Positions 430 through 39,510 of a DNA stretch of 64,000 bases are shown here, piece after piece. Within the stretch, counting starts at the first letter, position 1, and each line of letters begins with the position of its first letter. Made by a program: the position numbers and the translations under genes. The notes below the pieces were generated by a model that ran no database searches, had not been told where the DNA came from, and worked only from the letters and a program-made list of their open reading frames with translations. This DNA is from Mizuhopecten yessoensis. Lineage: Eukaryota. The stretch is taken from the NCBI RefSeq assembly GCF_002113885.1, contig NW_018480062.1:336470-400469 (forward strand). Reading direction: 5' to 3'.

Positions 430-980
430 GCCAAACATGGTCGCTTTAAAATTGGTATTCTTGCACAATCAAAGTCGTCTTAATTATTTTTATACCGACA
501 CAACGCAAGGCGGTTGCATACTTGATGAACTTGCACAGTCAAAGTCGTATACATGTTTGAACCACAGACATAATTAAAGTCGGCCTAATGCTGGATGTAC
601 TAGCGCAATCAACGTCTTTTAAATGCTTAATATACGTACACAACCAACGGCAGCTTCACACTTGATGTACTTTCACAATCAAAGTCATACACATTTTTGA
701 AACACAGACATAATTAAAGTCGGCCTAATGCTTGATGTTCTGGCACAATCAACGTCTTTTAAATGCTTAATATACGTTCACAACCCAAGGCAGCTTCACA
801 CTTGATGTAATTTCACAATAAAAGTCGTACACATGCTTGAAACACAGACATAAGTAAAGGCGGCTTAAACCTGGATGCAGTGGCATAATCAATGTCGTCT
901 AAATGTTTGATATACCGACGTAATCAAAGACGGCTTAATGCTGGATGTATCGACAAAATGTAAGTCCTCTCAATGCTTAA
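430..980. repeat. 35-bp minisatellite organised as a 140-bp four-mer higher-order repeat
   Basis: Monomers like CACAATCAAAGTCG...; the CAGACATAA(T/G)TAAAG block recurs with TAA at 571, 711 and 851 (140-bp period). Confidence 0.85.
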
Positions 981-3703: not shown

Positions 3704-4292
3704 CATTGAAGATAAGTTTAAAAGTTATCATAATTATAAATAAGTAATTCAGTACGAATTCAAGAAATACATGTCGAAAATGAAATATTTCCAATTTGAC
3801 AGCCCTTTTCATTGAAATTAAACACGGAATTTGTGGCTACATATATTTCTTTAAACCAAAAACCTTGCACTCAATTAGAAAACGATTGGAAAACGAACTC
3901 TACTTGTTCTTCTTCCAAATCCTTCGTTTTCAACAAACAAATATCTTTCACTTTACAGTTTCTTCATACTTCACAATTTAAGCCTACATATAGCTTCACT
4001 TATTCCCGTTAGCATCCAGAACACTTCTTAAAACTCATTTAATTAAAATATAAAAAATGGACGGATTCTTTTTAAAAATATTTTATTTTCACATTGAAAT
4101 TATATATACACACGTATTAACTTTACATTAAAGATAATTGGCAATTGATGCATACGTGTAATTTCACTTGTTGTCGTTAGAATATTTCATTTTTTTTTTT
4201 TACACTTTTACTTGATTTCGTACTGAATTACATCAATATGTCTATCATATGTCTATCTTTAATTATCATAACTTTTAAAATTATTTTTAATG
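3704..4292. mobile_element. Old foldback/MITE-like element with ~90-110-bp diverged inverted arms
   Basis: 3704-3790 (TAAAAGTTATCATAATT...GTAATTCAGTACGAATTCAAG...ATGAAATATT) matches the reverse complement of 4181-4292; no TSD resolved. Confidence 0.5.
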
Positions 4293-7200
4293 CTGTTATA
4301 CATATACAGCCATTGCTACCAACCAAAGCAACACAGTTACCACCGAACTATACAGACATACTCATGAATAAGTAATCCAAGTTATGATCCTATGATCACT
4401 TTGAACTTTAAATCCGTAGCAAATGTGACATACTTCGCAAAAGTTTATTTCTGAATGTTAGTGGGTCAAAACAGATTCAGAAACAGCAGTACTTCAGTTG
4501 TTATTGGGAGAGCATGGACATCCAAAATGCAATAAGTGGTCTTTAAAACCAAGCACAAAGACACGTCGAATACTAAATAAGCTTTAACTGCCCGCGAGGC
4601 AGTCTTTTGACCTAAATAGCTTGCACTATTGGGCTCTTTGATGGGTTACATATACTGTTTCGCTCGTCTTGGCATATGTCACACAAAGAGGACATTCATT
4701 CCTTTTTCAGGTTTATGCAAATTGCCTAAAATCAGGATCTTACGTAGATTACGTCTCTCACATATATCGTTAGAGTTAGACAAGTAATTAAGTGTTAGAA
4801 GCTAAGCTAATTTGGCTTGTTAGCGGATGTTATTAAGTATTGCTCCGTATATAAAAATATCGGCCAGGCAGGGTCAATTTTTCTATAAGCACGGCATTAT
4901 GAAGTAGCGTTACACATTCGAGATGGGTAGTGATAATCATTCACAGGCTTAATGAACGCGTATATAGGTCAAACGCTGTCTCGAATGAAGCGAAGAAACT
5001 AAATGATTCTTGACATTCTAAGTACAGTCATTGGAACGATCGAAATGTCTTTCAGCGCAATATCGAAAATGCTAATAAAACCCCTCCGTCGAGAGCGATG
5101 TGTTCAAGTTGGATTGGAGTAGAACATGAAGCGATGTATAGCTAGCCTGACTGGATCGTTAGTGGGTATCGTGTCAGCAACAGTTACACAAGAGGGTTCA
5201 GGTTCCTGCAACCTTCTCATCGCAATGTATTCACAGGAAACGGAAAATTGCTTTTTGATTTGCTTCGTTTTGCCTTACAATGTTGTCCACTATGACTTAA
5301 GGTTTGGATATGCCATCTGTCAATGAGCAAATGAAAATTAAAACCGAAGAGCAACCAAGTCTCAATAACGACAAAATAACAAAGGGTCGACAGCTGGACA
5401 GAAACAGTTAGAAACACACACCTCGATCTTAATGTAAGATACTAAGACTTTATATCAAATATTCCTATTTTTAGTTTGCAGCCCGACGTAACATCTAGAG
5501 GATACGGAAGAACACTGGAAAGAAAATGTCGCGCTCTTTAACACATTGAAGTTGACACGTGTTTGAGTTACTCACGTGTGTAGGTCACGAGAGATTTCTA
5601 AGCCGTTTCAAGGAACAATTTCATATTGTTACGGGGCTGATCTAATAACGAGGCGGATATAACGGATTGTCGCTTATAAACAGCCTCGACGGAAGTTCAA
5701 CAAGCCCTCTAAAGTCTCATGTGGAACATGTTATTAAGGAAGCACGGCGAGGTCGCTGTTAATGGGTCGGAATCGCGTCCTAGAGAATTCTACAATCAGA
5801 ATACAAATAAGGAACACGTAGGGTTGTACAGCAACCGGGAAGATTATGTGCGAAGTGCATTGCACTCATTGCTAATCTGAGTTTCCTCGTCCGTAATGTG
5901 TTGGAAAGACAGGCGGCAATGTGTCGGTTAGTTATACGTCCGGAACGATCTCACTGGTTACATAAAATATAAAGGAACTTTAAACACACAAAATTGCAAT
6001 GTGATAATGCTTTGCACAGCTGTTCACCCGCTATATTTTAAAATGTATTCTGGCGTCATAAATCTCTGTTTATTTTAAGTGGGTTTTTTTGTTTGAAGCG
6101 ATTAAACAGTTGTTTTTGTGGACATAATCAATATATGATTTTGTAAAAAGATAAAAGGTGTAAGCGAAGATGTGTTGATAAGTCATCAGGTTTACGTGAT
6201 TTCGCTATTCGATTTGAAATGAAACTCTGTTAATCGTAGTTTTTGGAAAGCGTCTTTTTCATCTCAAAAACGATTTTGTATGTACCACGGGACCTTTGTT
6301 GATACTTCGACTTATCACTGCATACGGCATATATAATGATACTACGACACATTTCATACTTATCCAGCGTATGATACGACGCCTCTTACAGTACTTAATC
6401 AATCAGACCTACTACTGTACCGCTACTCCCCTAATCGCCAAGACCAAGCACTGCACTTCAAAGATATGACTCTGCATTTCATATACCACTATACCTTAAA
6501 TATTTAAATTTATCTTATTTTATCTGTTATATACGCTAAACAAACCCGTACACCATGTTTAAATGTAGCCCAGTGACCTGACTTGGCAAACGTAGCTACA
6601 TATTTATCATTACAACTGACATTTGCTATCAGCAATAAGTTGGATAAGGGATATGTATACTAGTCCTATTTCTAATTGACACATGTACTTTGTTATCGGT
6701 CCTTACCGATAAACATCGTTAAGGTTTCAAATTATAAAAAAAAACGGACCAGTACCAACGGAAATGATTAAGTCGTTATATACCCTTAGCTGTTTGGATG
6801 TCGCAAGTAACCTTCCTACAGTGGCATACTGTAAATGTGTTGATCACAGTGTGTTATACACGTATCCCACGAGGTCGGTTATTGAGTTTTGAGATACATG
6901 TACATTGTACGACTGGTAAATAAATTATACTATTACTACATTCTATACTCGCATTGAGACGCTCACAGAGTAGTAAATCTTGTTTCCTATTTCTGATGAT
7001 CTTATTAGAAATTACTTTGCGACGCAGAGCGCCTATAAAATAATGTATTGTTATTTTACACGTGTAATCTATATCATGTTCTTATTGAAATACATTATTA
7101 TCACACTTCAAATATCATCAGGATGTTTCAAAGACAAGAAAGCGATGTTTTATTCTCGAATCGTTTTCTAATTAGACTTTTTGGAGTAGATGATTTTTAA

Positions 7201-10186: not shown

Positions 10187-11628
10187 TACAAGCGGAAAAA
10201 AGAAACTGTGCATGCCTAAAATGTGTTATAAAATTAAATGTGTATGACGTAGGACAACAAGGTTTTCAGGGACAATTTATTTGTTATTTATTAACAGCTG
10301 TATTCCATTTTTCACGTTATGGAATCAATAAGTTCCTCTCAGGAGTGACGTAAACACAGCAGGGGTCAATACTGAGTTCACTAAGTTAATACCTCGTATG
10401 TCCACCGTTTGCCTTAATGCAAGCCTGGCAATGTCTACGCATGGAGCCTATCAGAGGGTTCAAGATCTGTACCAACGCTGTAGCCAAATCAGCCAACGTC
10501 ACCGGTTGATTAGGTAATGCCCGTAATCTGCTCTTCATTTCTTCCCAGACGTGTTCAATAGGCGACAGATCGGGGGATGCAGCAGGCCAGGGGAACACGT
10601 CAACGTTCTGCTGGGCCAGACAGTCCATAGCGACACGAGCTGTGTGTGGCCTGGCGTTGTCCTGTTGTAGCGTAATGTGACGTTGCTGCCCACGACGTTG
10701 GTCCGAAAGAATCTCGACACGGTAACGTAGCGCGTTCAAATTCCCGTTAACAACCACCAGAGGCGTTCTACCGTTCGGTGTGATGCCGCCCCAAATCATA
10801 ACGCTGCCTCCGCCGAAAGAACGTCGTTGTACCACACACACGTCACGGAAACGTTCTCCAACGCGACTATACACTCTAGAACGGCCGTCACTACTATCCA
10901 GGTGGACTCGCGACTCGTCCGTAAACAAAATGCGTGCCCAATCCCGTCGAGTAAATCGCAAATGCCTTCTGCACCAGTCCAGACGTGCTTCACGATGATG
11001 TGGCAGTAGAACTAGGCGGATTGCAGGACGTCGCGGACGGATAGCTCGTTCACGCAATCGGTTCCGTACAGTTCTCGGGCTTATTGGTAGCAACCAAGGG
11101 ATTGTCCGTGCAGTCAAACTTGCCGTTTGGAAGCGATTTCTCAAATGGACAAGCCGAATATGGTTGCCTGTTGACGTGGCGTCACACGATGACGTCCCGC
11201 ACGAGGTCGATCGCCGACGTGGCCAAACTGTTGATGTCGTGTCCACAAATCCCGGATTGCGTTTCGATGGAAATGAAAACGTGTAAAGACAACGGCTTGA
11301 CCCATACCAGCTTGAAGCATACCAATAATCCGGAGGCGGTCATTTTCATTGAGCCTCGGCATAGCATTAATCACAAATTAAAACGTTATAATGCTATTCA
11401 CTGGTCTCAACAAAGTGGCCCAACAGTTGAAAAATAAACTTTCATTGTCGAATTGCAAACTGGTCAACGCCTATAGAGAGCAAACTGCACGGGAAAAACT
11501 GTCAATAACACACGGATAGTGTGTATGTGTCATACTCGGTCATGCGTGTGAATTTTCATGTATATACAGTTGGTAATGCAAGTTCTATAACAATTCTCCG
11601 CATGCACAGTTTCTTTTTTCCGCTAGTA
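10187..11628 (-). mobile_element. Tc1-family (DD34E) DNA transposon, full length but defective
   Basis: 29-bp TIRs TACAAGCGGAAAAAAGAAACTGTGCATGC (10187-10215; 11600-11628, 1 mismatch), flanking TA dinucleotides (boundary ambiguous by 2 bp), internal transposase. Confidence 0.93.
10386..11362 (-). pseudogene. Tc1 transposase with a frameshift near 11165 and apparent small in-frame deletions
   Basis: N-terminal paired-like HTH MPRLNENDRLRIIGML...DRPRAGRHRVT in one frame; HIRLVHLRNRF...FTDESR...QQDNARPH...SPDLSPIEHVW...NGGHTRY in another; 34 residues between the second D and E. Confidence 0.9.
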
Positions 11629-12334: not shown

Positions 12335-14417
12335 AATACTATACCGCTAGTACTGATACTACATATTGCACATTTATTTATATAAATTTGTGTTTGACCA
12401 AACTGACAAAATGTATAATCTATATGGAAACCTTATTTTTTTATGTACATACACGCGAAAACCATCGAAGGTACATTACTAAATCTATTTTAGCCGACAA
12501 ACCCGTTAATTTGCTGGATATGCACTTAGAGGTATACGGGTTATCTGCATTCTAGTTTGTTAGGCGTATTTTTGTTTGTTTTGTATCGCTGTGATGAGTT
12601 GTTGGACATGTACTTCAGAGAACACGGGGTATCTACATTCTAATATGTTTTGAGTATTCTTTACTTGTTTTGCTCGATACATGAAATAACCCTTATGCAC
12701 CGTCTATTATCTTGTACAACTTAAATTATAGAAATGTTAACACAGCCATATGTACTATATACGTGTAGCTAATAGATATACAATACCCAGTAGACCTAAC
12801 GTGGGGCTGTATGGAATTGCCTTCTCTACAGTAATACATATACACTGTAATATAATTGGATAGATAGCCATTTAATTCTGTTTCAGCCGATCATGACACT
12901 TCCTTCGAGAAAACTCGATTGCATCAGGGCCGTTATACTGCAAAGAAAATTGACCGAAGTTTTACATCAATAAACCGCCATGTATACAGTATAATACACA
13001 GAAATTGTATTTGGGGACAGTCTGGCACATTCTCCCTCTGTTCTATTTGTTGTCGAGTACGACAGAAACGCATTGTGTTTAACAATGTTGTTGGAGTAGT
13101 TACAATGTATCGTGAAGAAGATATCTTACTCTGTAGTGTATGCCTATTGCTCATTCAATGTATTTGAAACACACACCTTTGAAAGATGAACGTTAACTAG
13201 GTTCATTTGATTGCATCTGTTAAATATGATAACAAATACAGTATGCCCAGAAAAGTACAATACAAAAATAAATAATAAAATAGAAAAAGGATACAATAAG
13301 AATATTTTGAACTGATCTTCAAAACTGATTTTAAAATTTGATATTACTCGTTTTCGATGTGAATACGGCGAGCCAAGAAGTCAAACTAAGTACTCTCACA
13401 TCGTCCAGATTATCATTATATAAAGTAAGTACTTGTAAGTAACAGATACCATAACAGCTTTATCACGTCTGATTCTATTTTTAGATATAAATGTACGACA
13501 AAAGACGAAGTATGGCAAATTATGAACTATTATTTGAATAAATTCTTTGGTAGATACCCGATTCTTTTAAGAACATCGGTCAGTTTGTCCATGAAATCAA
13601 AGAAGACAAACAACCGACCCCTGTTGAACACCGTTAATTGTTTTTAATTACACTAGAAGTGGGCAACAAACGAAAGGTCATTGTTGGATATCGATTATTT
13701 TGTCAGTGAAAGCAAAAGTAGGCAACAACTGACCCTTGTAAAATATCCGTCATAACGCCAGTAAAATCTGAAGTAGGTTATCACAGTGTGACACCATGGA
13801 TATTTTGTTGAAGTCATGGTGAAAATATCATAAATTTAAGTTACACACCCATTGCAATAGTCATTAAACGTACACATTGCAGAACAAAGCCATCCATTGT
13901 TCATTACAAATTCATCCTTGTAAGTTTCAATTATTTATCTAGGTTGTTATATCCCGAGTGATTCTGGGTCATTCCTAATTGTCCACAAAATTGACCCAGC
14001 GTCATTATCCTTCGTTTAAATTATATGTAGTAGTGTCATTATTTGTCATTATTACTTTTAATATATTTGTGGTATTTAGCTATACGCGTTCGTATGTAAC
14101 GGAAATCAGCCTTCCGTGTAATTTTGTACGTCACGCATTGCGGCAAAACTTTTAGCGCGCGCGCGGAAATAGCACGCGTAAATGCGAGTAAGGTACTGAG
14201 CGGATGTGATGTAATGTGTTGTAAACCTGTTTGTCCAGTACGTATTGTCTATGTATAGAATACCTAGTATTGAATGTAGGGTAATTTACCTGGTGCACTG
14301 GTCACTTTGAACAGAGCGGCCAGAGCGAGCACAGCGAACATTTGTACACCTATATCTTTACCTAGCCAGCATAGGAATTAAAAGAGGTAGCGGGCACTAG
14401 AGCCAAAAGCAAATAAT

Positions 14418-14616
14418 GTAAGTACTCGCGTATAAATATAAGTTTAATTCATTATAGTATCTATTCAATAATATATTTAATTAACGTAATATTTTTGTTA
14501 AAAGTAAAGTTAATATTTTGAAAGTCTTTGTAAATTTAGAAATCGGGCGTGGTCAATTTAGTAGACAAGTGATTTCGAAGAAGCAAGTTTTTAATATATA
14601 TTGTTTCCTTTTATAG
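14418..14616 (+). other. Spliceosomal intron 1 within the 5' LTR (199 bp)
   Basis: AAT|GTAAGT ... TTGTTTCCTTTTATAG|CTT; the 3' LTR reads AAATAAT|CTTACA at 22819/22820. Confidence 0.93.
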
Positions 14617-14686
14617 CTTACATTGAACGAGTAAGACTGAGGACTCGGCGGACTTTGTCCGAGAAAACCCTCTTCACATTGAAGAG

Positions 14687-14880
14687 GTGGGTATTTTAAT
14701 ATATTTGTAATTATGCTGTATTTCTATATAATATATAGATTGAATGTAACAGTTGTAATACGTATTCCATTATTGTAACTTATGTAACTGGCTACGGCCA
14801 GGTAGTTGTTTGACATGTCTTAGCTTATGTGATTGTATAAATGTTATATGTGTAGTAATATGATGTATTTCATGTTACAG
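14687..14880 (+). other. Spliceosomal intron 2 within the 5' LTR (194 bp)
   Basis: GAG|GTGGGT ... TATTTCATGTTACAG|GGT; the 3' LTR reads GAAGAG|GGTTTT at 22889/22890. Confidence 0.93.
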
Positions 14881-14895
14881 GGTTTTTACTTACGT

Positions 14896-14901
14896 AATAA
14901 A
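14896..14901 (+). promoter_or_regulatory. LTR polyadenylation signal AATAAA (3' LTR copy at 22905-22910)
   Basis: AATAAA ~60 nt before the LTR end, downstream of both introns. Confidence 0.65.
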
Positions 14902-14961
14902 TTAACTGAGAAAAGAACCCAGGAGTTGTCGTATATCCACGATAAAAGACGACTATTACAT

Positions 14962-14973
14962 TGGCGCCCACGT
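14962..14973 (+). promoter_or_regulatory. Primer binding site, probably tRNA-Lys-like
   Basis: TGGCGCCCA(CGT) 1 nt after the 5' LTR; resembles the tRNA-Lys PBS TGGCGCCCAACGTGGGGC over the first 9 nt. Confidence 0.75.
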
Positions 14974-15453
14974 ATCGTTGATGGCCTAGTGTACCCGCCG
15001 ACACGCTTGACGGGATGGATATCTACCGACCGTAAATGTAGACCGGACTGGAAAATTCACCTGAGTGACCTATTCCACCTGATGACGGGATGGATTTCGT
15101 CTGTATGTGAATGCAGGATGTATACCAGAGAGGCACGCACGTACGCTCGAACGACCTTCGGACGACCTTGATCAACGAGTGTTTTGTGTATCACGCGACT
15201 GCAATGTGCGCAGTTGATTCTATATGTTATTGGACCCGGAGAAGAACTGGACCTGTGCTGACCGTACACGGTAAATGACAATTGTGTACCATTGACTTTC
15301 CACCCATTTTACTATATATCTTGTATTTTCTTTCGTGAAACATGAACTCTTAATGGTGAAACTTGATTTATCTTATTCATTTCATAATTGTTCTGATATT
15401 TTTTTGTGTGTGTATATTTGTCTAATAACTTCGTTCGGTATTATCTTTTGTAC

Positions 15454-15651
15454 TTCCGGTATTTTTCTTTGCATTTCCGGTAAATATTGTGAACTTCCGG
15501 TATTTTATTTTGTACTTCCGGTATTTTCTTTGTATTTCCGGTAAATATTGTGAACTTCCGGTAAACCATGGTACTTCCGGTATAACTTTAACTTCTGGTC
15601 GAATTTAACTTTCTGTATTTTCGTACTTCCGGTACGCTGTCAATTTCCGGT
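15454..15651. promoter_or_regulatory. Array of nine TTCCGGT (ACCGGAA, ETS-type) motifs, mostly ~20 bp apart, in the retrotransposon 5' UTR
   Basis: Copies at 15454, 15475, 15495, 15516, 15536, 15556, 15575, 15627, 15645; variant TTCTGGT at 15593. Confidence 0.6.
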
Positions 15652-16500
15652 GACATTTTTGAAAAAAATCCAGTATTATTTAATATCTGTTATCAGCAAA
15701 CATTTATATTTGTATTGAGTTATTGTAGTAGAAAGTAATTGAATTATTTAATTGTATTTTTCAGTTATTCATTTTTTTTGTTCGCTTCAATATATTTCTA
15801 GTTTGAATTGAATTTTGATTTCACTCATGATTTATTGAAATGCTTTGATTGAATTTATTTTTTTCCCTTCTCTTCAACTTTGATTATCTTGATTGTTTTC
15901 ATATTGAGCTTTCATTTTTGATTTTGTTTAGTACAAATTGACGTTTCTTGGATTTTTCAAAATGTTTTTGTGAATACAAATTGTGTATTTTTTTTTTTTG
16001 TTCTCGTGTCTTTAAATTAATTTATACGTGGTTGTCGGAAATATACTTTGCTTCAGAGGAGTCACTTGTTATTAATTTGACTTCGTGGTGTTTTTTTTGG
16101 AATTTATTTCTTTTGAAATTGGCTGGGGTTTTTTTTACTTAATTTTGGCTTAAGTTGTCTTATAGTGTTAAATTTCTGTTGTCATTGATAATTGATAAAT
16201 TTACTTAGATTTTTGTTTTCATTTTTTCTTCTGTTTCGAAAGTTAACATGTAGGATTACTTAAGTAATTTTTTTTTCAAGTGGAATAGTTATTTTGTGGG
16301 TACATGCTTGGTCGCAGTTGATGTTGTTCTTTGTTACACGTGCTATGTGGATCTTTCTGTATTTATGTTGAATGGATGATGGTGCGTTAGATGCTATTTA
16401 TCGCTAATCGGATTGATTTTTTCGTTGACTTATTCGCGTGTATTTTGGCTGAACGCGACCGAATATCATTCTTCTTAGGATTTACATAGTTCTATTTCAG

Positions 16501-16686
16501 GTAAGTCATTTAATTCATTGACGGTAGATGTGGCAGAGTTGGCTGGTTTTATTTGATTTATAAGTGTGTATATCTATGAGAACGAGAGTAAAATACTTGT
16601 TCTGTGTTTGGTGAGAACACATAGATGAACTTTGTTGGTTTGCTTGAATATTTTATTTGTGTTTTGTTGTGTTTATTGTGATACAG
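16501..16686 (+). other. Putative 5' UTR intron ending 8 nt before the gag ATG (186 bp)
   Basis: Consensus donor CAG|GTAAGT; U-rich tract then GATACAG|GTTTCGCGATGG; size similar to the LTR introns; no spliced copy in the window. Confidence 0.6.
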
Positions 16687-16694
16687 GTTTCGCG

Positions 16695-17858
16695 ATGGCC
16701 GATTCTGAAGAAAAACTATCGCAGGCGGAAGCGATACTTCCACAAGAGGAAGCGGACTCTGTAGAGCATGTGTCTAAGTTGTTTTCTCAAATGGGTGCTA
16801 GACCTAAAGGTGATAGTTTAGTTAAGTTAAGGAGTCAGATGATGGATTTCCTTAATTCAACAGGAGGATTGGACACTGCTAATCCGTCGATGGCTGGACA
16901 AGGGGTAAGTGGAAATGTTGTTTCTCAGGGTATTGGTTCTACCACAGGCACTCTGGACACGAGATTCTACAAGTTACCGTTATTTTCTGGAGATCAAGGA
17001 AAGGGTGAGGCTACTTTCGATTTATGGAAATACGAAGTGCAATGTCTGATTGACACAGGTAAGTCACAGGATGTCATTGGGCAGTCTATCCGAAGATCTC
17101 TGAAGGGAACTGCAGCCAGAGTAGCCATGCGGTTAGGAGCTAATGCGACACCCGCACAGTTGATCGCCAAACTTAGAAGTCTGTATGGTATAGTAGATGA
17201 CCAGGAGACTCTGTTGGAGAATTTCTATGCCGCACATCAGCAACCCAAGGAAAATGTGACTGAGTGGGCTTGTAGACTGGAAGACTTGTTGCTTAGAGCC
17301 GATTCTGGTATAGGACCTGCGGAACGCAATAAGCGGTTGCACAACAAGTTTTGGTCTGGTCTGAGGCAAGACTTAAGAGATGTTACTGGCCACAAGCATG
17401 ACTCCATTGCTGATTATGAAGAACTATGCATAGCAGTAAGATCTATAGAAAGGACAAGAGACAACGAGAAACCATCGAAGGCGACTGTTACTGTCAACTC
17501 AGCTGTTGAAGGGGAGGAGAAGGAGGATTTGAGGTCTGTGGTCAACCAATTGTCTGCTGCTATTCAGAGGTTAGAGAAGCAGATATCCGATGGTGGGACA
17601 ACCTCGTGGAAGAACAACAGAGATCACAGGAACAGGAATAGAGGAAACTCTAACAACTACGGAGGAGGGTCTGTTTACCACTCTAAGCCGTCGCAAGAGA
17701 AGACTGACCAGGATGACGCGTCTTGGGACAGGAAACCTGATATTATATGCTGGAGGTGCAGACAGCCGGGACATATCAGAGCGCGATGCAGGGTAAATAT
17801 GGATCACTCGCGCAGTTCGGTAAAAGGGAAGGAGTCTATGAAGACGGACCACTCATAG
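16695..17858 (+). CDS. gag: Gag (PNMA-like capsid, CCHC zinc knuckle), 387 aa
   Basis: FSGD...FDLWKYEV...IRRSLKGTAA...LRSLYG...QQPKENVTEWACRLEDLL capsid motifs; CWRCRQPGHIRARC knuckle; first ATG in good context (GCGATGG). Confidence 0.93.
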   Translation: MADSEEKLSQAEAILPQEEADSVEHVSKLFSQMGARPKGDSLVKLRSQMMDFLNSTGGLDTANPSMAGQGVSGNVVSQGIGSTTGTLDTRFYKLPLFSGDQGKGEATFDLWKYEVQCLIDTGKSQDVIGQSIRRSLKGTAARVAMRLGANATPAQLIAKLRSLYGIVDDQETLLENFYAAHQQPKENVTEWACRLEDLLLRADSGIGPAERNKRLHNKFWSGLRQDLRDVTGHKHDSIADYEELCIAVRSIERTRDNEKPSKATVTVNSAVEGEEKEDLRSVVNQLSAAIQRLEKQISDGGTTSWKNNRDHRNRNRGNSNNYGGGSVYHSKPSQEKTDQDDASWDRKPDIICWRCRQPGHIRARCRVNMDHSRSSVKGKESMKTDHS

Positions 17859-20800
17859 ATTTCCGAATTCAAGGTCCGAACAAGAGTACTAAGGCTACTA
17901 GGACAGGAACACAAATGGTTGGCAATGCTAATGAAGTTGATGTCAACGTAGAAGGTAAGGGGACCAGGGCGTTACTTGATACAGGTGCGACCGTGTCTAC
18001 GGTTAGCCAACATTTTTATGAATGTCATCTGAGTCATTTGGACCTGCAGCCACTGGATGAAATTCTTTCTATAGAATGTGCTGATGGTCAACAGTTACCT
18101 TACTCCGGATTTATCGAAGCGGGAGTCAGTTTTGAAGGACTATTTGGAAGAGATGAGCAGAGGTGTCTTTTGCTGGTAGTCCCCAACAGCAACTATAACT
18201 CCAAGGTACCAGTGTTGTTTGGAACCAACGTTCTGTCGGTATTGTTGGAAGGGTGTCGAAGCAGGAATGGACCGAAGTTCTTGCAGAAGGGATTGGATAC
18301 TCCATGGTTTTTAGCATTTCGCTGTATGACATTGAGGGATCGGGATTTGGTGAGAAATCGCAACAGCATTGGCCTCGTCAAGAATGCAGGAAACATGGAT
18401 TGCGTCCTTAGACCGAACTCTACTATCACCCTGAAGGGATATGTAGACCAGCGGAGCGCCTATCCAACTACCTGTGCTATCATGCAGCCCACGGAACGAT
18501 CCAAGCTGTCCAAAGATATTGATGTTACACCTACAGTGTTTTCATATGACTGCGACAGTACACATCCATTGGACGTTCAACTATCCAATCTGACAACACA
18601 TACGTTTATCATTCCTCCCAAGGCAATTTTATGTGAGATACAGCCAGTGATTGTCCAGGAACTTCCTACTGTTGATGGAGAGGTGGGAATACCGAAGTCA
18701 TTTATGGATAAGATAGACTTTACCAATTCAGCTGTTACGGAGGAGGAACTACAGCTAGGAACGAAACTCATAAAGGGATACGAGGATATATTTTCACACG
18801 GAGATACTGACCTCGGGTGTACTAATCTCGTGAAACATCGAATCGATTTGACGGATCCAGTTGCTTTTAAACAACGCCATAGGAGGATACCACCTTCTAT
18901 GTATGACGAAGTGAAGACTCATCTTCAGCAACTTTTGTCTGCGGGAGTCATCAAACCATCATACAGTCCCTGGTCATCGAACATTGTTCTGGTGAGGAAG
19001 AAAGATGGATCATTGAGGATGTGTGTGGATTTCCGACAGCTAAATCAACGCACCATTCGGGATGCATACGCGTTACCACGAGTAGAGGACATCCTGGATT
19101 GTTTAGCTGGATCACACTACTTTACTGTGCTGGATTTAAAGTCGGGTTATCATCAGGTTGAGCTAGAGGAAGAACATAAGGAGCGAACTGCATTTACCGT
19201 CGGCCCACTGGGGTTTTATGAGTTCACGAGGATGCCTTTTGGACTTACGAACGCTCCTGCGACATTTCAGCGCCTGATGGAGAGATGCATGGGAGACCTA
19301 CACTTAGCTATCTGCCTGATATATCTTGATGATTTAATCATCTTTTCGCGAACGTATGAGGAGCATCTGGAACGACTAGGAAAGGTTTTTCAGAGACTCA
19401 GAGACAACGGTTTGAAGCTTGCGCCTAAGAAATGCCAGTTCTTTATGAACAGAGTTGCCTATGTTGGACACATCGTCACACCGGAAGGCATTGAGGCAGA
19501 TCCCAAGAAGATTGAGAAGGTACGAGACTGGCCGACACCGTCTAATCCTGAAGAACTACGTCAATTCCTAGGTTTTGCTGGTTACTACAGGAAGTTTGTA
19601 AAGGATTTTTCAAAGATTGCGAGACCTTTAACTGACCTGTTACCACCGACCAGAGTAAAGAAGAACAAAGGAAGGGCAAAGACTAAGATAAATGGCGTTA
19701 AGTGGACATGGGCATCGGAGCATGATACAGCGTTCAACGGCCTGAAGGAAGCGTTATGCAATCCTCCTGTGCTTGGATATGCTAACTACAGTCAGCCGTT
19801 TGAGCTTCACACCGATGCAAGTACCTTAGGACTAGGAGCCGTTCTATATCAAGAGCAAGATGGACAGTTACGACCTATTTGCTACGCCAGTCGAGGATTG
19901 AGCAAGTCGGAGAGGAATTACCCGGCTCATAAACTGGAATTCCTGGCGTTAAAATGGGCAGTTACCGAAAAGTTCCATGACCATCTATATGGACAGACGT
20001 TCACCGTTTTAACGGACAACAACCCGCTGACCTACGTTTTGTCGAAAGCAAAGCTTGACGCGACGGGGCATAGGTGGTTGTCCGCTCTAGCGGCATACAA
20101 CTTCGATATTAAGTATCGACCAGGACGGAACAACGCGGACGCAGACGCTTTGTCACGGCTTCCGGGATGTAACATATCATCAGAATCTGTCCAAGCCGTC
20201 TGTAAAGGAGCAACGTTTTGTAAAGGTTCATTGGTGGAAAGCTTGAGCCTATCAACAGAGGTATTGGATATGCTTGACGTTGATGACGAACATGGTTTCC
20301 AAACCATGACACCCCACCAGTGGCGAACTCTTCAGACGGAGGACGATGTTATAGGGGAATGGCTACCCATCATTAGGAGGAATCTGAAGCCAACACGGAA
20401 GAGGTTTTCAGCTATACCAGAAAACGCAACCCTTAACAGATGCTGGGATAGCTGGAAACTGAAACGTGGTGTGCTATATAGACGGGTATCTGATGGTGAG
20501 ACCGATGTGGACCAACTTGTACTTCCGGTTGCCATGCGAGAGAAGGTCCTGACGTCATTACACAATGACATTGGCCATCCTGGAAGGGATAGGACGTTAT
20601 CTCTGCTGAGAGATAGATTCTTTTGGCCTGGTATGACCAAAGATGTGGAAACGTGGTTGAAGGAATGCCAGAGATGTCTACTCAGGAAATCGTCGACTAG
20701 CATTAGGGCTCCGTTAGTCAACATTGTTACCACCCAACCTATGGAGTTGGTATGCATGGACTTCTTGAAACTAGAGGCGTCTAAAGGGGGGTTTCAAGAT

Positions 20801-22132
20801 GTTTTAGTAATCACCGACCATTTTACGAGGTATGCCAAAGCCATTCCAACTCGGAGTCAGTCGGCTAAAGCAACAGCGGAGGCTTTGCAGGGATTTATTG
20901 AACATTACGGAATTCCGCGGAGATTACATTCCGACCAAGGAGCTAACTTCGAGGGGAAAGTAATAGAAAGTTTGTGCGAAACATTTCATATTACTAAATC
21001 GAGAACGACACCATACCATCCTAGCGGAAATGGAATGTGCGAACGTTTCAACAGAACCCTGATCGACATGTTAGGCACATTGGAACCGCATCAAAAGAAA
21101 GACTGGAAGAGCTTTGTGGGTTCGCTCACATATGCGTACAACTGTACACGGCATAAGACAACGGGTTATTCGCCATTTCAGCTGATGTTTGGACGACAGC
21201 CACGATTGCCCGTTGATCTATTGTGTGGAGTAAACGAGGAAATTACCCCAACTAGCATGCCGGATTATGTCAAAAACATGAGGAACCGGATGTCACATTC
21301 GTTCAGCTTAGCGAGTAAGAAGGCTCGGGAATCGCAGAGTCGTCAGAAGGCAGGCTACGATCTACGTAGTAGAGAAGCCGTTTTGGAACCGGGTGACCGC
21401 GTTCTTGTTAAGGTACTTGCCTTTGAGGGACGTCACAAGCTAGCGGATCGCTGGGAGCCTGACGTATACATCGTACAGAGTCAACCCAACATTGACATTC
21501 CGGTATACACCATACTTCGAGAGAGTGGTGAAGGAAAGAGTAGAACTCTTCACAGAAACCATCTACTTCCAATTGGAACTATACCGGTGGAAGTGGATAC
21601 GGTACCCATTGCACATCCACCTCGGCCGGTACCTCGTGTTAGGAGGTCGAGGATGGATAGTGGTCCGCATCATCGGAAGTCTGTGGCTGAGCCTGTTGTA
21701 TCACCGCCTGTAAGTGACAGCAACGAGAGCTCGGATGAGGAATTTGTGGGTATGAACGTTCCTACTAACGTTCAACGGCCTCCCACACAGGACAAGGTGC
21801 AGCCGAGCAAGGACATGACACCCGTACCTGGACCTCAGATCGACTTCAGTGATGAGGAGACATCGGAATCGGAACCGGAGGATGAACCTGCAGCTGCAGT
21901 ACAGGGGAATACTACTTCGCCTGATCCGGAGATTCCAATACCCCGACGATCGACAAGGAACAAACGACCGCCTAATTGGATGACATCAGGCGAGTTTGTT
22001 TGTTCACAACAACCTGCTGGAGCGGAATGGAAGATGAAAGCCATGTTTCTGATGGACATAACATCTACAGCATCCTTCGGAGATATGCCAGCATCAGCCC
22101 AACAGGCATTGTTAAATATTTTAACTGGTTGA
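17747..22132 (+). CDS. pol: Pol polyprotein (protease, RT, RNase H, integrase), probably made as Gag-Pol by frameshift near 17819-17825
   Basis: LLDTGA protease; RMCVDFR, RMPFGL, YLDD RT; HTDAS, TDNNPL RNase H; H-H-C-C zinc finger with CMDF, HSDQG, NGMCER integrase; 1461 codons without a stop. Confidence 0.97.
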   Translation: MLEVQTAGTYQSAMQGKYGSLAQFGKREGVYEDGPLIDFRIQGPNKSTKATRTGTQMVGNANEVDVNVEGKGTRALLDTGATVSTVSQHFYECHLSHLDLQPLDEILSIECADGQQLPYSGFIEAGVSFEGLFGRDEQRCLLLVVPNSNYNSKVPVLFGTNVLSVLLEGCRSRNGPKFLQKGLDTPWFLAFRCMTLRDRDLVRNRNSIGLVKNAGNMDCVLRPNSTITLKGYVDQRSAYPTTCAIMQPTERSKLSKDIDVTPTVFSYDCDSTHPLDVQLSNLTTHTFIIPPKAILCEIQPVIVQELPTVDGEVGIPKSFMDKIDFTNSAVTEEELQLGTKLIKGYEDIFSHGDTDLGCTNLVKHRIDLTDPVAFKQRHRRIPPSMYDEVKTHLQQLLSAGVIKPSYSPWSSNIVLVRKKDGSLRMCVDFRQLNQRTIRDAYALPRVEDILDCLAGSHYFTVLDLKSGYHQVELEEEHKERTAFTVGPLGFYEFTRMPFGLTNAPATFQRLMERCMGDLHLAICLIYLDDLIIFSRTYEEHLERLGKVFQRLRDNGLKLAPKKCQFFMNRVAYVGHIVTPEGIEADPKKIEKVRDWPTPSNPEELRQFLGFAGYYRKFVKDFSKIARPLTDLLPPTRVKKNKGRAKTKINGVKWTWASEHDTAFNGLKEALCNPPVLGYANYSQPFELHTDASTLGLGAVLYQEQDGQLRPICYASRGLSKSERNYPAHKLEFLALKWAVTEKFHDHLYGQTFTVLTDNNPLTYVLSKAKLDATGHRWLSALAAYNFDIKYRPGRNNADADALSRLPGCNISSESVQAVCKGATFCKGSLVESLSLSTEVLDMLDVDDEHGFQTMTPHQWRTLQTEDDVIGEWLPIIRRNLKPTRKRFSAIPENATLNRCWDSWKLKRGVLYRRVSDGETDVDQLVLPVAMREKVLTSLHNDIGHPGRDRTLSLLRDRFFWPGMTKDVETWLKECQRCLLRKSSTSIRAPLVNIVTTQPMELVCMDFLKLEASKGGFQDVLVITDHFTRYAKAIPTRSQSAKATAEALQGFIEHYGIPRRLHSDQGANFEGKVIESLCETFHITKSRTTPYHPSGNGMCERFNRTLIDMLGTLEPHQKKDWKSFVGSLTYAYNCTRHKTTGYSPFQLMFGRQPRLPVDLLCGVNEEITPTSMPDYVKNMRNRMSHSFSLASKKARESQSRQKAGYDLRSREAVLEPGDRVLVKVLAFEGRHKLADRWEPDVYIVQSQPNIDIPVYTILRESGEGKSRTLHRNHLLPIGTIPVEVDTVPIAHPPRPVPRVRRSRMDSGPHHRKSVAEPVVSPPVSDSNESSDEEFVGMNVPTNVQRPPTQDKVQPSKDMTPVPGPQIDFSDEETSESEPEDEPAAAVQGNTTSPDPEIPIPRRSTRNKRPPNWMTSGEFVCSQQPAGAEWKMKAMFLMDITSTASFGDMPASAQQALLNILTG
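17819..17878 (+). promoter_or_regulatory. -1 programmed ribosomal frameshift signal: G_GUA_AAA, 5-nt spacer, H-type pseudoknot
   Basis: pol is in the -1 frame; stem 1 17831-17841 / 17853-17863 (11 bp, 2 G-U); loop CGGACC (17845-17850) pairs with GGTCCG (17873-17878). Confidence 0.75.
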
Positions 22133-22414
22133 GTATGTGTGCCATTTTACGTAACGTTATTTGAACGTTAATATGCATTTGTATATGTAGTATGTATGTG
22201 TAAATGGAAACCCCATGGAAGATGAGGACATCTTTCATTTAAGCGGGGGAATACCTGATGAATTGGGGAGTTAATATATATTTTTTTGTTTTTTCCTCAG
22301 TTGCAGATTTTATATTTGAATTGTGTGTAAATATTTTGCATGGACTTTTGTTATATTGTTTTATGTTTTATTTACATTATTTCCTGATCATGTAGATGAG
22401 GACATCTTCCATCT

Positions 22415-22427
22415 AAGGAGGGGAGAA
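22415..22427 (+). promoter_or_regulatory. Polypurine tract
   Basis: AAGGAGGGGAGAA directly before the 3' LTR TG. Confidence 0.9.
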
Positions 22428-22969
22428 TGTAGTAGTGTCATTATTTGTCATTATTACTTTTAATATATTTGTGGTATTTAGCTATACGCGTTCGTATGTA
22501 ACGGAAATCAGCCTTCCGTGTAATTTTGTACGTCACGCATTGCGGCAAAACTTTTAGCGCGCGCGCGGAAATAGCACGCGTAAATGCGAGTAAGGTACTG
22601 AGCGGATGTGATGTAATGTGTTGTAAACCTGTTTGTCCAGCACGTATTGTCTATGTATAGAATACCTAGTGTGGAATGTAGGGTAATTTACCTGGTGCAC
22701 TGGTCACTTTGAACAGAGCGGCCAGAGTGAGCACAGCGAACATTTGTACACCTATATCTTTACCTAGCCAGCATAGGAATTAAAAGAGGTAGCGGGCACT
22801 AGAGCCAAAAGCAAATAATCTTACATTGAACGAGTAAGACTGAGGACTCAGCGGACTTTGTCCGAGAAAACCCTCTTCACATTGAAGAGGGTTTTTACTT
22901 ACGTAATAAATTAACTGAGAAAAGAACCCAGGAGTTGTCGTATATCCACGATAAAAGACGACTATTACA
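22428..22969 (+). repeat. 3' LTR (542 bp), the precisely spliced form of the 5' LTR
   Basis: 935 - 199 - 194 = 542; TG...CA termini; followed by TATA TSD. Confidence 0.96.
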
Positions 22970-24469
22970 TATATACTTATTATTTTTATTCTAGTTTCAT
23001 GTACTTGCCTAAATAGATAAAGAGAATTAAACTCATTTTATCCTCGTTCAACCTTCGAGTGATATTGGGCCAACTCGATGAGCGCATGAATATTTTATAT
23101 TAACATCAGGGTCATTTGGTTGGACGGAAGTTGTGGAATCGATTGTTTTTTCCAAAAGTCTCAGAAAGAGTATTCGTGCAGTAGATCATTCTTTACATGT
23201 CTTTCGAATCAACACCGTTAAAGTCGTCGGAGGCCAATACTATTATGACACGCCTGGTTTATACTAAGTTTGTTTAACGTTTTATCGTTTAAGAAAAAGT
23301 TTGGCCTTCCGACATTTTATAACACAAATTCTGATAAGAAAACGAACATGCATTTAATAAATATTCACGATTACCGTGACACATCGTGTGAGAAAATCAT
23401 GCCGATTTTAATGTAAATATTACTCCAGAAGGAAGACGTACGTGTGGTTAGATCATTTAAGCAATAATTTGTCTATTGCGTTAGAAGTTTATTTCCCCGT
23501 GTCTCCGTTGAAAAAGTTTCAAAATTGTCGAAAACAACTGACGATGACTGCTTTATTTACACTATGCACCCTTTTCGTTGAATACTCAATAGAATATTTG
23601 ATTATTTAAAAAAAAGGAATATAAGTTTGGTTTTTGTTTTTGTTTCTGTGCAAGTTGATTTCACCGCACGGCTTGCGAGGTACAGGTAAGACCGGGCGAG
23701 ATAAACTCACTCGATGGGTATCGGTCAAATCCGTCAAATCCGTCATTCTCATACAAAGAGCGATGTAACTGTGTTACAAATATTACGCTTGTGCCTGTGA
23801 CGATACTTACACCGTTTATAATGACTTGTGACTAATTGTAAATACAGCATGGTTTTCTTAAAACCACGAAATAAACGAAAAGAAATCCCCAACGAAATAT
23901 ACTGCTTTTACAGTAGTAACATTAGAAAATATAGCCTTGTTCCAGCAAAATAAATTGTTCCTTATGCGATAAAACAGTTTGCCCGGAATGAACCAGGAAT
24001 CACAAACAAAATTAAAAAAGATGAAATAGCATGTTTGACATAGCTGTTCTTATCGTTTGCAAAACCGTTCCGTTCATCTCCAAGATGTAAAGGCGCATAT
24101 TATTGGACTATCTTTGATCGACATGTATTGCATTCCATCATGAATATTATAAAGACGCATTTATCTTGAAGCATATTTAGTGTTATATTGATTTAAAACA
24201 TTTTGAAAATTTGCCAAGTGAGTGAATGTGCCTTAAATTTACGTTGACAGTTCCATGCTACATAAACAACTCGTCCCAGACGAAGGAATGTGGCAAATTT
24301 GTTTAAACGGATGTAATTTTTAAAGAAAGATTACCTCGGCACTTTTACGAAATGAACGTAGTGAAGGTAATGCCATAAACGTTTGTCTGTACAATGTGGC
24401 ACTTGTTTTAAATACATTTATACTTTATATTATTGAATTCGCATTCGGTAAACACAAGCGGGTACTTAC

Positions 24470-38640: not shown

Positions 38641-39510
38641 CATGTGTTTGTAGGGGGCGTAAGAGAGATCAGTCATCGGTCAAATAACATAGTTACGATT
38701 CTTTATTGTTCTCTTCACACATTTTACACAACTTACTTCAATTTTCTCATTTGTTGCCTAACTGCCGTGTCAGAATTCTTGTCATTTGAACCTGTATGAC
38801 GTAAATCACGAACCCACAATTAAATGATTAAAGAAAATAGTAGGGACACTAACGGTTCTGTCAAAAACAAATTAGCGTGGCTCAATTAAAATAGGGTTTT
38901 TATTATTGCAAAATATGAAGTAGCTCTTAACGTATTTTCCAATATTCCCAAAGCTATCAGTACTGTCATACTCATTTCAAACCTACGTTATAAAACTTGA
39001 CTGTTTATGGCATGAAGCATTTGATTACCACAGGATGGTGATTATATTAACTGCTAAAGATACAAAACGTGACAAATGCGTCCTCCTGATGGGTTAGCAT
39101 AGCACTTGAGGCGCTTTACTGTAGCCGTTATACACATAAAGCTGCATGATTATTGGAACTCTCTATACAAAGGAGACAAAAAACATGTCTAAAGGCAATG
39201 CGTTTCTAACACAATCATGTGGCAAGATTGCTTGGATTTTAATGTTTGTTTATCTAAGAGATTTATTCTTTGTGAACAAATTGAATAAACATGTAGAGTA
39301 AAGGTACAACATGTAATTTGTTATTATTATTATAAATACAATAAACGATTATCAATACAATGTATAATCATTATTACAATGGCAATTAACACAAAAGTAA
39401 AGACGATCAATATGAAACCATCGATATCGACAAAATAACTCATTTAGATAAATATTAATCTATAACACAAATTACCTATTTTTTGCACAATATTAGATAA
39501 CATAAAGAAG

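What the first reader, a model, noticed from the sequence alone, without database searches (positions are those of the whole stretch)
14026..22969. Gypsy retrotransposon whose 5' LTR has two spliceosomal introns precisely absent from its 3' LTR
Seen: the 5' LTR is 935 bp and the 3' LTR 542 bp. The 393-bp difference is exactly two segments, 14418-14616 (GTAAGT...TTTTATAG) and 14687-14880 (GTGGGT...GTTACAG), both with canonical sense-strand splice sites. The 3' LTR has the exact exon-exon junctions and is otherwise 537/542 identical. The ORFs are intact and the TSD matches. Established: two-jump LTR reverse transcription copies both LTRs from one U3-R-U5 template, so new insertions have identical LTRs, and spliced introns are normally lost from both at once. 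Inference: one LTR descends from spliced RNA and the other from unspliced RNA. This is either a family that keeps an intron-bearing promoter LTR and an intronless terminator LTR through non-canonical replication, or a captured intermediate of intron loss. I do not know of a described element with this layout but cannot search the literature.
Basis: partly seen in the sequence, partly recalled or inferred. Interest (0 to 1): 0.97.

Follow-up and report, generated by a model that had tools for sequence, protein, structure and literature searches.

The report
Scallop Gypsy element with intron-bearing LTR
An intact scallop Gypsy retrotransposon really does have two introns in its left terminal repeat that are exactly spliced out of its right one, but relatives carry the introns in both repeats, so this copy is most likely a one-off hybrid of spliced and unspliced templates.

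Summary
The 5' LTR (14026-14960, 935 bp) equals the 3' LTR (22428-22969, 542 bp) plus two blocks and 5 substitutions. The blocks are 14418-14616 and 14687-14880, and both have GT..AG ends. PBS, PPT, a TATA duplication, gag and pol are all present and intact.

The blocks behave as real spliceosomal introns. They are AT-rich, and chance GT..AG ends on both has a probability of about 3.5e-5. The same layout can be read in relatives from Pecten maximus and Pinctada imbricata: intron, a 70-nt exon, intron, then an AG|GG acceptor just before the only 3' AATAAA. The acceptor-AATAAA part is also seen in three further loci.

All four relatives seen with both LTRs are symmetric. The two in which the layout is readable carry the intron-like blocks in both LTRs. 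An inherited "intron+ promoter LTR / intron- terminator LTR" design is therefore not supported.

The best reading is a one-off chimera of an unspliced-type and a spliced-type LTR. It probably formed during reverse transcription of two co-packaged RNAs, as proposed for asymmetric HIV-1 proviruses. Gene conversion after integration is a close rival.

No second copy of this family's LTR could be reached, so the genome-wide census remains undone. LTR-contained introns themselves have been reported only in a 2026 maize preprint.

The parts
14022..14025 (+). 5' target-site duplication, TATA
   Evidence: Read directly. It matches 22970-22973. Chance match is about 0.5%.
14026..14960 (+). 5' LTR, 935 bp, TG..CA, intron-containing form
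14026..14417 (+). U3 plus LTR exon 1 (transcription start not mapped). GC 41%.
   Evidence: Four of the 5 LTR substitutions lie here (14239, 14269, 14271, 14326).
14418..14616 (+). LTR intron 1, 199 bp, AAT|GTAAGT ... polypyrimidine tract-TATAG|C, GC 23%
   Evidence: Absent from the 3' LTR with a unique boundary.
14617..14686 (+). LTR exon 2, 70 nt, GC 47%. It ends in the hairpin CTCTTC-ACATT-GAAGAG directly at the donor site.
   Evidence: Exon 2 is also 70 nt in P. maximus (L006:8759-8828) and P. imbricata (L013:8716-8785).
14687..14880 (+). LTR intron 2, 194 bp, GAG|GTGGGT ... GTTACAG|GG, GC 28%
   Evidence: Absent from the 3' LTR. It has 4 possible registers, one of them GT..AG.
14881..14960 (+). 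LTR exon 3 plus U5. It contains the only AATAAA of the LTR, at 14896-14901.
   Evidence: The acceptor-then-AATAAA arrangement is shared with L006, L011, L013, L012 and L001.
14962..14971 (+). Primer-binding site, TGGCGCCCAC, one base after the LTR
   Evidence: The same motif follows the LTR in L006, L011 and L013.
15436..15650 (+). Leader repeats carrying 9 TTCCGG cores (CTTCCGGT; resembles an ETS-type site, from my own knowledge)
16501..16686 (+). Candidate third intron in the leader (CAG|GTAAGT ... GATACAG|G), ending 8 nt before the gag ATG. Retained in this copy and unverified.
   Evidence: The 78%-identical relative L005 lacks the donor region.
16695..17858 (+). gag, 387 aa, PNMA-like capsid domain plus zinc knuckle
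   Evidence: It is 98% identical to Mizuhopecten yessoensis LOC110448649.
17747..22132 (+). pol ORF, 1461 aa, in the -1 frame relative to gag: protease, RT, RNase H, integrase
22415..22427 (+). Polypurine tract, AAGGAGGGGAGAA
22428..22969 (+). 3' LTR, 542 bp, intron-less form. Exon junctions lie at 22819|22820 and 22889|22890. AATAAA is at 22905-22910.
22867..22895 (+). Perfect 12-bp stem with a 5-nt loop that exists only across the spliced exon 2/exon 3 junction
   Evidence: -30.9 kcal/mol, z = -6.55, 0 of 200 shuffles as stable. One search gives the position.
22970..22973 (+). 3' target-site duplication, TATA

Best explanation
This is a young, intact Ty3/Gypsy retrotransposon of a scallop, probably Mizuhopecten yessoensis. 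It belongs to a bivalve lineage whose LTRs normally contain two spliceosomal introns flanking a 70-nt exon. These lie just upstream of the LTR's polyadenylation signal, so most likely inside R.

Normal copies carry the introns in both LTRs. Occasionally RNA spliced in R is reverse transcribed, which yields intron-less LTRs.

This copy is a one-off chimera. Its 5' LTR was templated by the unspliced form and its 3' LTR by the spliced form. The route I think most likely is reverse transcription inside a particle that packaged two RNAs, one intron-plus and one intron-minus. Plus-strand strong-stop DNA made on the intron-plus minus strand jumps to the primer-binding site of the intron-minus minus strand. 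That gives 5' LTR intron-plus, 3' LTR intron-minus, and a normal integration with a matching duplication.

Shown: the anatomy, the exact junctions, the conserved architecture, and the symmetry of relatives. Inferred: that R contains the introns, that two RNAs were involved, and the strand-transfer route. The layout is not heritable. Progeny of this copy should have two identical LTRs of one form or the other.
For: - Exact exon-exon junctions in the 3' LTR and canonical splice signals in the 5' LTR. Chance is about 3.5e-5.
- Introns are AT-rich (23-28% GC) against 41-47% for exon 1/U3 and exon 2.
- The same three-exon LTR with a 70-nt middle exon can be read in P. maximus and P. imbricata relatives.
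- A polypyrimidine-AG|GG acceptor lies 15-60 nt before the only 3' AATAAA in six loci.
- The relatives have symmetric LTRs. L006 is 1097/1095 bp at 99.7%. L013 is 965 bp with 0 mismatches. L012 is 1479 bp with 1 mismatch. L001 is at least 1985 bp at 99.9%.
- The TSD is intact and the ORFs are intact, as expected of a normal integration.
- Precedent: 29.5% of sequenced HIV-1 proviruses had asymmetric LTRs, mostly intact 5' and deleted 3'. The authors explain this by intermolecular plus-strand strong-stop transfer between two co-packaged genomes (PMC9278108).
Against: - No second copy of this family's LTR could be examined. The existence of intron-less copies or of R-spliced RNA in this genome is therefore inferred from this one 3' LTR.
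- There is no RNA evidence for splicing or for the R boundaries.
- The 5 substitutions all lie in the central 210 bp of the 542-bp LTR. This hints at a limited conversion tract rather than whole-LTR replacement, but it is not significant (span test p = 0.075).
- From my own knowledge, plus-strand transfer in retroviruses is usually intramolecular.
- The introns in relatives are predicted from sequence only.
Confidence: 0.45

Rival explanations
1. Post-integration intron loss at the 3' LTR only. The element inserted with two intron-containing LTRs. Later a partial cDNA of a spliced element transcript, or an intron-less LTR elsewhere in the genome, converted the middle of the 3' LTR by homologous recombination. 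This is the reverse-transcriptase model of intron loss applied to a transposon.
For: - The loss is precise and removes two adjacent introns together.
- It affects the 3'-most introns of the element's transcript, while the 5' LTR introns and the candidate leader intron remain. These are the classical signatures of cDNA-mediated intron loss (model described in PMC3652778).
- All 5 substitutions fall in LTR positions 214-423. There are none in the outer 213 + 119 bp, as expected for a limited tract from a slightly diverged donor.
- The TSD is intact.
Against: - The clustering of substitutions is weak (p = 0.075).
- The model needs a donor that was not observed.
- A cDNA could convert either LTR, so the polarity is not specifically predicted.
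Confidence: 0.33
2. Assembly artefact. The assembler switched between two near-identical copies, one with intron-plus LTRs and one with intron-minus LTRs, inside the 7.5-kb internal region.
For: At least one other copy or fragment exists in M. yessoensis at 99.7% identity (L004), so near-identical paths are available to an assembler.
Against: - The flanks carry a matching 4-bp duplication, which has about 0.5% probability by chance if the two ends came from different loci.
- There are no N gaps and no anomaly in the region.
- The artefact would still require both LTR forms to exist in the genome.
Confidence: 0.08
3. Heritable asymmetry. The family replicates non-canonically so that each new copy gets an intron-bearing 5' LTR and an intron-less 3' LTR.
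For: Only the structure of this one intact copy supports it. One could also argue a functional rationale: splice donors upstream of the 5' poly(A) signal might suppress it, while the intron-less 3' LTR terminates freely. That rationale is my inference.
Against: - All four relatives with both LTRs visible are symmetric. The two with a readable layout carry the predicted introns in both LTRs.
- By established knowledge of the two-jump scheme, no canonical path makes the two LTRs from different templates.
- The 5 substitutions show that the LTRs are not fresh copies of one template.
Confidence: 0.04
4. The 5' LTR gained the two segments after integration by insertion of intron-generating mobile elements (introner-like). 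The 3' LTR would then show the original state.
For: Introner-type transposons that create introns are known, mainly in aquatic eukaryotes (PMC12130899, listed).
Against: - The two segments share no similarity with each other.
- They have no other copy in the 64-kb window.
- They have no flanking duplications or terminal inverted repeats.
- Segments in equivalent positions, around a 70-nt exon, are present in both LTRs of P. maximus and P. imbricata relatives.
Confidence: 0.02

Closest known systems
Asymmetric-LTR HIV-1 proviruses (Joseph et al. 2022, J Virol, PMC9278108)
   Same: One provirus has an intact 5' LTR and a 3' LTR lacking a segment, and the two are otherwise near-identical. The authors explain this by two co-packaged genomes and an intermolecular plus-strand strong-stop transfer.
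   Different: There the missing segments are reverse-transcriptase misalignment deletions, usually running in from upstream of the LTR, and the proviruses are often defective. Here the missing segments are two exact spliceosomal introns, and the element is intact, germ-line and in a mollusc.
Spliced LTR-contained transcripts of maize LTR retrotransposons (bioRxiv 10.64898/2026.05.08.723830)
   Same: Introns lie wholly inside the LTR, in a three-exon pattern with a short middle exon.
   Different: The maize evidence is long-read RNA. Its introns are long (mean about 1.3 kb), the transcripts are read as lncRNA, and no intron-less DNA copies are reported. Here the evidence is a DNA copy of the spliced form, the introns are about 200 bp, and the host is an animal.
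Reverse-transcriptase-mediated intron loss in host genes (model tested in PMC3652778)
   Same: The loss is precise, removes adjacent introns together, and happens at the 3' end of a transcription unit while 5' introns stay.
   Different: The unit here is a retrotransposon that supplies its own reverse transcriptase, and the lost introns lie in a terminal repeat.
Retroviruses with a splice donor in R (HTLV-1, BLV, foamy viruses) and the intron-bearing Ogre elements of legumes. This entry rests on my own knowledge and was not checked here.
   Same: Splice signals are placed in the LTR or leader of a reverse-transcribing element. The element must keep an unspliced genomic RNA.
   Different: In those retroviruses the acceptor lies outside the LTR. 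In Ogre the intron is internal. Here both whole introns lie inside the LTR.
Inter-element recombination and gene conversion between proviral LTRs (for example HERV-K; my own knowledge)
   Same: The 5' and 3' LTRs of one provirus trace to different sublineages.
   Different: Those cases differ by substitutions and often lack matching duplications. Here the difference is splicing status, and the duplication matches.

Membership tests
Ty3/Gypsy (Metaviridae) LTR retrotransposon | Direct LTRs ending TG..CA, flanked by a short target-site duplication | tested here: met
   LTRs at 14026-14960 and 22428-22969. The TSD is TATA on both sides.
Ty3/Gypsy (Metaviridae) LTR retrotransposon | pol domain order protease, RT, RNase H, integrase | tested here: met
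   Pfam hits in that order along the 1461-aa ORF.
Ty3/Gypsy (Metaviridae) LTR retrotransposon | tRNA primer-binding site after the 5' LTR and polypurine tract before the 3' LTR | tested here: met
   TGGCGCCCAC at 14962-14971 and AAGGAGGGGAGAA at 22415-22427. The cognate tRNA was not identified, and there is no tRNA gene in the window.
Ty3/Gypsy (Metaviridae) LTR retrotransposon | The two LTRs of a copy have the same structure, being copied from one template | tested here: not met
   935 versus 542 bp. This is the anomaly itself. It concerns this copy, not the family: the relatives are symmetric.
U2-type spliceosomal intron | GT..AG ends with extended donor consensus and a polypyrimidine tract before the acceptor | tested here: met
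   GTAAGT..TTTCCTTTTATAG and GTGGGT..TTTCATGTTACAG. Chance is about 3.5e-5. No formal splice-site scoring was run.
U2-type spliceosomal intron | Exact removal in an RNA-derived copy | tested here: met
   The 3' LTR equals the 5' LTR minus both segments, with 537/542 identity.
U2-type spliceosomal intron | Spliced transcripts observed | not testable with these tools
   No RNA data for this species could be reached. The ORF search across the LTR/PBS junction found nothing.
U2-type spliceosomal intron | Positions conserved in homologous sequences of other species | tested here: met
   A 70-nt exon 2 bounded by consensus sites in P. maximus and P. imbricata elements. The acceptor before AATAAA is seen in six loci. 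These are predictions from sequence only.
Asymmetric-LTR provirus formed during reverse transcription | One LTR lacks a segment, the LTRs are otherwise near-identical, and the integration is normal | tested here: met
Asymmetric-LTR provirus formed during reverse transcription | Origin from two co-packaged templates by intermolecular plus-strand transfer | not testable with these tools
   It needs sister copies or an experiment. Only the precedent was read.
cDNA-mediated (reverse-transcriptase model) intron loss | Loss is precise, affects adjacent introns, and is 3'-biased | tested here: met
   Both 3' LTR introns are lost. The 5' LTR introns and the candidate leader intron are kept.
cDNA-mediated (reverse-transcriptase model) intron loss | A bounded conversion tract carrying donor alleles | tested here: inconclusive
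   The 5 substitutions span only 210 of 542 bp, but p = 0.075.
Introner-like intron-generating transposon | Multiple similar copies, with terminal repeats or duplications at the insertion | tested here: not met
   The two segments show no similarity to each other. There is no other copy in the window and no flanking repeats.

The most novel reading that the evidence does not exclude
The asymmetry is not an accident but a recurrent product of how this family replicates. For example, the 3' copy of R might be routinely spliced while the 5' copy is kept, followed by a non-canonical second jump. Independent insertions would then repeatedly show an intron-bearing 5' LTR and an intron-less 3' LTR.

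A milder version is more likely. In it, the two R introns and the 70-nt exon are an old, selected module of bivalve Gypsy elements, and they survive reverse transcription because R is present twice in every genomic RNA.
Probability: 0.05. Interest if true: 0.95.

Novelty: new variant of a known kind. Interest (0 to 1): 0.6.

Why it matters
Reverse-transcribing elements should lose any intron that is spliced from their genomic RNA. How some of them keep introns is therefore an open problem.

This locus shows introns lying wholly inside an LTR in an animal element. A DNA copy of the spliced form sits 8 kb from the unspliced form in one intact element. That serves as natural proof that the sites are used and that spliced RNA reaches reverse transcription.

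The same three-exon layout appears to be conserved across scallop and pearl-oyster families. This suggests a function, for example control of the poly(A) site that follows the last acceptor, or of export and expression.

The two-state LTR also gives a built-in marker for tracing strand transfers and recombination in a wild retrotransposon. On the practical side, LTR-identity dating and LTR-finding software assume equal LTRs and would mis-handle such copies.

Tried and rejected
**Searches for other copies of this family**
- BLAST of the element against the window found only its own LTRs.
- The full-length pol search gave at best 62% identity.
- The gag search found one 98% hit in M. yessoensis. 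That locus (L004) is a 1.2-kb gag fragment between N gaps at a different site. The gaps were left as they are.
- The 112-aa ORF crossing intron 2, exon 3, the PBS and the leader had no relative.
- Two metagenome scans with LTR and LTR+PBS patterns gave nothing, or three chance matches in bacterial-looking contigs.
- A representative search with the last 330 aa of pol gave at best 51% identity.

**Other dead ends**
- Rfam and the tRNA scan found nothing.
- Nucleotide BLAST of the LTR and leader against relatives' LTRs found nothing. The similarity lies in architecture and short motifs only.
- The insertion (introner-like) origin of the two segments was rejected.
- Clustering of the 5 substitutions was tested and is not significant (p = 0.075).
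- No canonical slippery heptamer was found in the gag/pol overlap.
- The candidate leader intron could not be supported from the 78% relative, which lacks the donor region.
- The Mytilus LTR shows the acceptor and AATAAA, but I could not place a 70-nt exon 2 in it.

**Handling notes**
The natural spliced form (window:22428-22969) was used by reference.
- The in-script removal of the two segments served only to count mismatches.
Full report
**1. The observation**

The window is AT-rich (about 37% G+C) and has no N runs.

Direct-repeat search and a pairwise alignment show a 5' LTR at 14026-14960 (935 bp) and a 3' LTR at 22428-22969 (542 bp). Both start TG and end CA.

The 393-bp difference consists of exactly two blocks, 14418-14616 (199 bp) and 14687-14880 (194 bp). 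With both removed, the two LTRs align without gaps and differ at five positions (14239, 14269, 14271, 14326, 14647).
- The first block has a unique boundary, AAT|GTAAGT ... TTTCCTTTTATAG|C.
- The second can be drawn in four registers because of an AG|G repeat. One register is GAG|GTGGGT ... GTTACAG|G.

From the window's own GT and AG frequencies, the chance that both indels have GT..AG ends is about 3.5e-5. That figure does not count the extended consensus.

The blocks are 23% and 28% G+C. The surrounding LTR parts are 41% (U3/exon 1), 47% (exon 2) and 34% (exon 3/U5).

The rest of the element is complete:
- TATA duplication on both sides. A chance match is about 0.5%.
- Primer-binding site TGGCGCCCAC one base after the LTR, and polypurine tract AAGGAGGGGAGAA before the 3' LTR.
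- gag of 387 aa with a PNMA-like domain.
- A 1461-aa pol ORF with protease, RT, RNase H and integrase, in the -1 frame. There is no env.

**2. Host and family**

gag is 98% identical to Mizuhopecten yessoensis LOC110448649. The matching DNA in the public Yesso scallop assembly is 99.7% identical over 1240 bp. It lies at another locus and is surrounded by N gaps, which I left unfilled. The window is therefore from that scallop or a very close relative.

The nearest full-length pol proteins are only 62% identical and come from bivalves or bivalve-containing metagenomes.

**3. The two segments are a conserved feature of the lineage**

I fetched relatives through their proteins. A Pecten maximus element (L006, gag 46% identical) has LTRs of 1097 and 1095 bp at 99.7% identity, TSD AGTA, and the same PBS.

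Read against the window's LTR, the P. maximus LTR shows the same plan:
- a donor ACT|GTGAGT;
- an AT-rich 289-bp segment ending TTATTGTAG;
- an exon of exactly 70 nt ending in the hairpin CTCTTC-loop-GAAGAG directly at a donor GTAGGT;
- a 316-bp segment ending TTATTTTAG|GG;
- the LTR's only 3' AATAAA about 15 nt further on.

A Pinctada imbricata element (L013, LTRs 965 bp, 0 mismatches) again has GTAAGT..TTTTTAG, a 70-nt exon, GTAAGG..TTTTAG|GG and then AATAAA.

The polypyrimidine-AG|GG acceptor shortly before AATAAA, followed by the LTR end and PBS, is also seen in a Logan contig that starts inside intron 2 (L011), in Mytilus trossulus (L012) and in an ENA contig (L001).

The introns in relatives are predictions from sequence. 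The window's own 3' LTR is what validates the junctions for this family.

Since the only AATAAA of the LTR (14896-14901) lies after the second acceptor, both introns most likely sit in R. The transcription start was not mapped.

**4. The asymmetry is not a family trait**

All four relatives in which both LTRs are visible are symmetric:
- L006, 1097/1095 bp;
- L013, 965/965 bp;
- L012, 1479/1479 bp with one mismatch;
- L001, at least 1985 bp at 99.9%.

In L006 and L013, where the layout can be read, the intron-like segments are present in both LTRs. This is what canonical reverse transcription predicts for an unspliced genomic RNA. The intron-plus/intron-plus state is therefore the normal one, and the window's 3' LTR is the derived oddity.

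**5. Mechanism**

In the two-jump scheme (established knowledge), the 5' LTR is copied from plus-strand strong-stop DNA. That DNA is itself copied from the minus strand of the 3' LTR. A single template, whether spliced or unspliced at either copy of R, therefore gives two identical LTRs. I went through the cases of 5'-spliced or 3'-spliced R, with early or late first jumps. All of them give symmetric products (inference).

Two templates are needed. Two routes fit.

(a) *During reverse transcription.* A particle holds one intron-plus and one intron-minus RNA, and both are copied into minus strands. Plus-strand strong-stop DNA made on the intron-plus strand then jumps to the other minus strand. 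The result is 5' plus / 3' minus with a normal TSD. This is the mechanism proposed for the 29.5% of HIV-1 proviruses found with asymmetric LTRs, mostly intact 5' and deleted 3' (PMC9278108).

(b) *After integration.* A partial cDNA of a spliced transcript, or an intron-less LTR elsewhere, converts the middle of the 3' LTR. The loss is precise, takes two adjacent introns together, and strikes the 3' end of the transcription unit while the 5' introns remain. This is the classical signature of the reverse-transcriptase model of intron loss (PMC3652778).

The five substitutions all lie in the central 210 bp of the LTR, which leans towards (b) or towards a partial heteroduplex. The test is not significant (p = 0.075).

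I put (a) at about 0.45 and (b) at about 0.33. Assembly copy-switching gets 0.08. It is disfavoured by the matching TSD, and it would still need both LTR forms to exist. A heritable asymmetric mode gets 0.04. Insertion of the two segments gets 0.02. That last reading is rejected because the segments are unrelated to each other, are unique in the window, lack insertion marks, and have positional counterparts in both LTRs of relatives.

**6. Comparison with what is known**

Introns wholly inside LTRs were reported in 2026 for maize from long-read RNA. The pattern there is also three exons with a short middle exon, and the authors call it the first such evidence (bioRxiv 10.64898/2026.05.08.723830). 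Phrase searches for LTR introns found nothing else relevant, and the listing from a search of bivalve transposon papers showed none that deals with this.

LTR asymmetry from reverse transcription is known in HIV-1.

What is new here is the combination: an animal Gypsy lineage with short, positionally conserved LTR introns, and one intact copy that carries the unspliced and spliced forms side by side. I class it as a new variant of a known kind.

**7. Limits**

No other LTR of this family could be reached with the tools. No RNA data were available.

The natural spliced LTR was used by reference. No contig looked human.

One bench step, mobilising a marked copy, is referred.

**8. Verdict**

Interest is 0.6.

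Noticed in passing
window 22867-22895: Splicing of intron 2 joins AAAACCCTCTTC (end of exon 2) to GAAGAGGGTTTT (the last 6 nt of exon 2 plus the first 6 nt of exon 3) around a 5-nt loop. This makes a perfect 12-bp hairpin just upstream of the AATAAA (z = -6.55). In the unspliced 5' LTR only the inner stem (about 8 bp) forms. By eye, the P. maximus junction would extend its stem by only 2-3 pairs.
   Followed up: partly
window 15436-15650: The leader downstream of the PBS carries 9 TTCCGG cores (mostly CTTCCGGT) in about 200 bp, within 20/41/61-bp tandem repeats. From my own knowledge the motif resembles an ETS-type binding site. L011 has similar ACTTCCGGT motifs in its leader.
   Followed up: partly
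window 16501-16686: A candidate third intron (CAG|GTAAGT ... GATACAG|G, 186 bp) ends 8 nt before the gag ATG and is retained in this copy. It is not supported by the 78% relative L005, which lacks the donor region.
   Followed up: partly
window 22221-22253 and 22395-22427: The sequence leading into the polypurine tract (GATGAGGACATCTT..AAG.GGGG.A) occurs twice, 174 bp apart. The upstream copy could be a second plus-strand primer site or a relic. P. maximus has the same motif before its 3' LTR.
   Followed up: no
window 17747-17858: gag and pol overlap by about 110 nt, with pol in the -1 frame, but no canonical X XXY YYZ slippery heptamer was found there.
   Followed up: partly
window 10386-11246 (- strand): A 286-aa ORF with DDE_3 and Tc3-type HTH transposase domains: a Tc1/mariner-type transposase remnant or copy.
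   Followed up: no
window 36025-38642: A 50-bp satellite with about 52 copies at 82% identity and strong strand asymmetry (GC skew -0.37).
   Followed up: no
window 460-949; 46047-46299; 59174-59535: Further tandem repeats with 70/140-bp, 141-bp and 184-bp units.
   Followed up: no
L006:8149-13283 (Pecten maximus LR736856.1): The P. maximus relative is an internally deleted element. It has gag plus a 316-aa pol remnant between two intact 1.1-kb LTRs, so it is probably non-autonomous.
   Followed up: no
L001:1-16507 (ENA ERZ25069870 contig): A related element with very long LTRs (at least 1985 bp) and a leader of more than 6 kb holding about 150-bp tandem repeats at 4012-6887.
   Followed up: no
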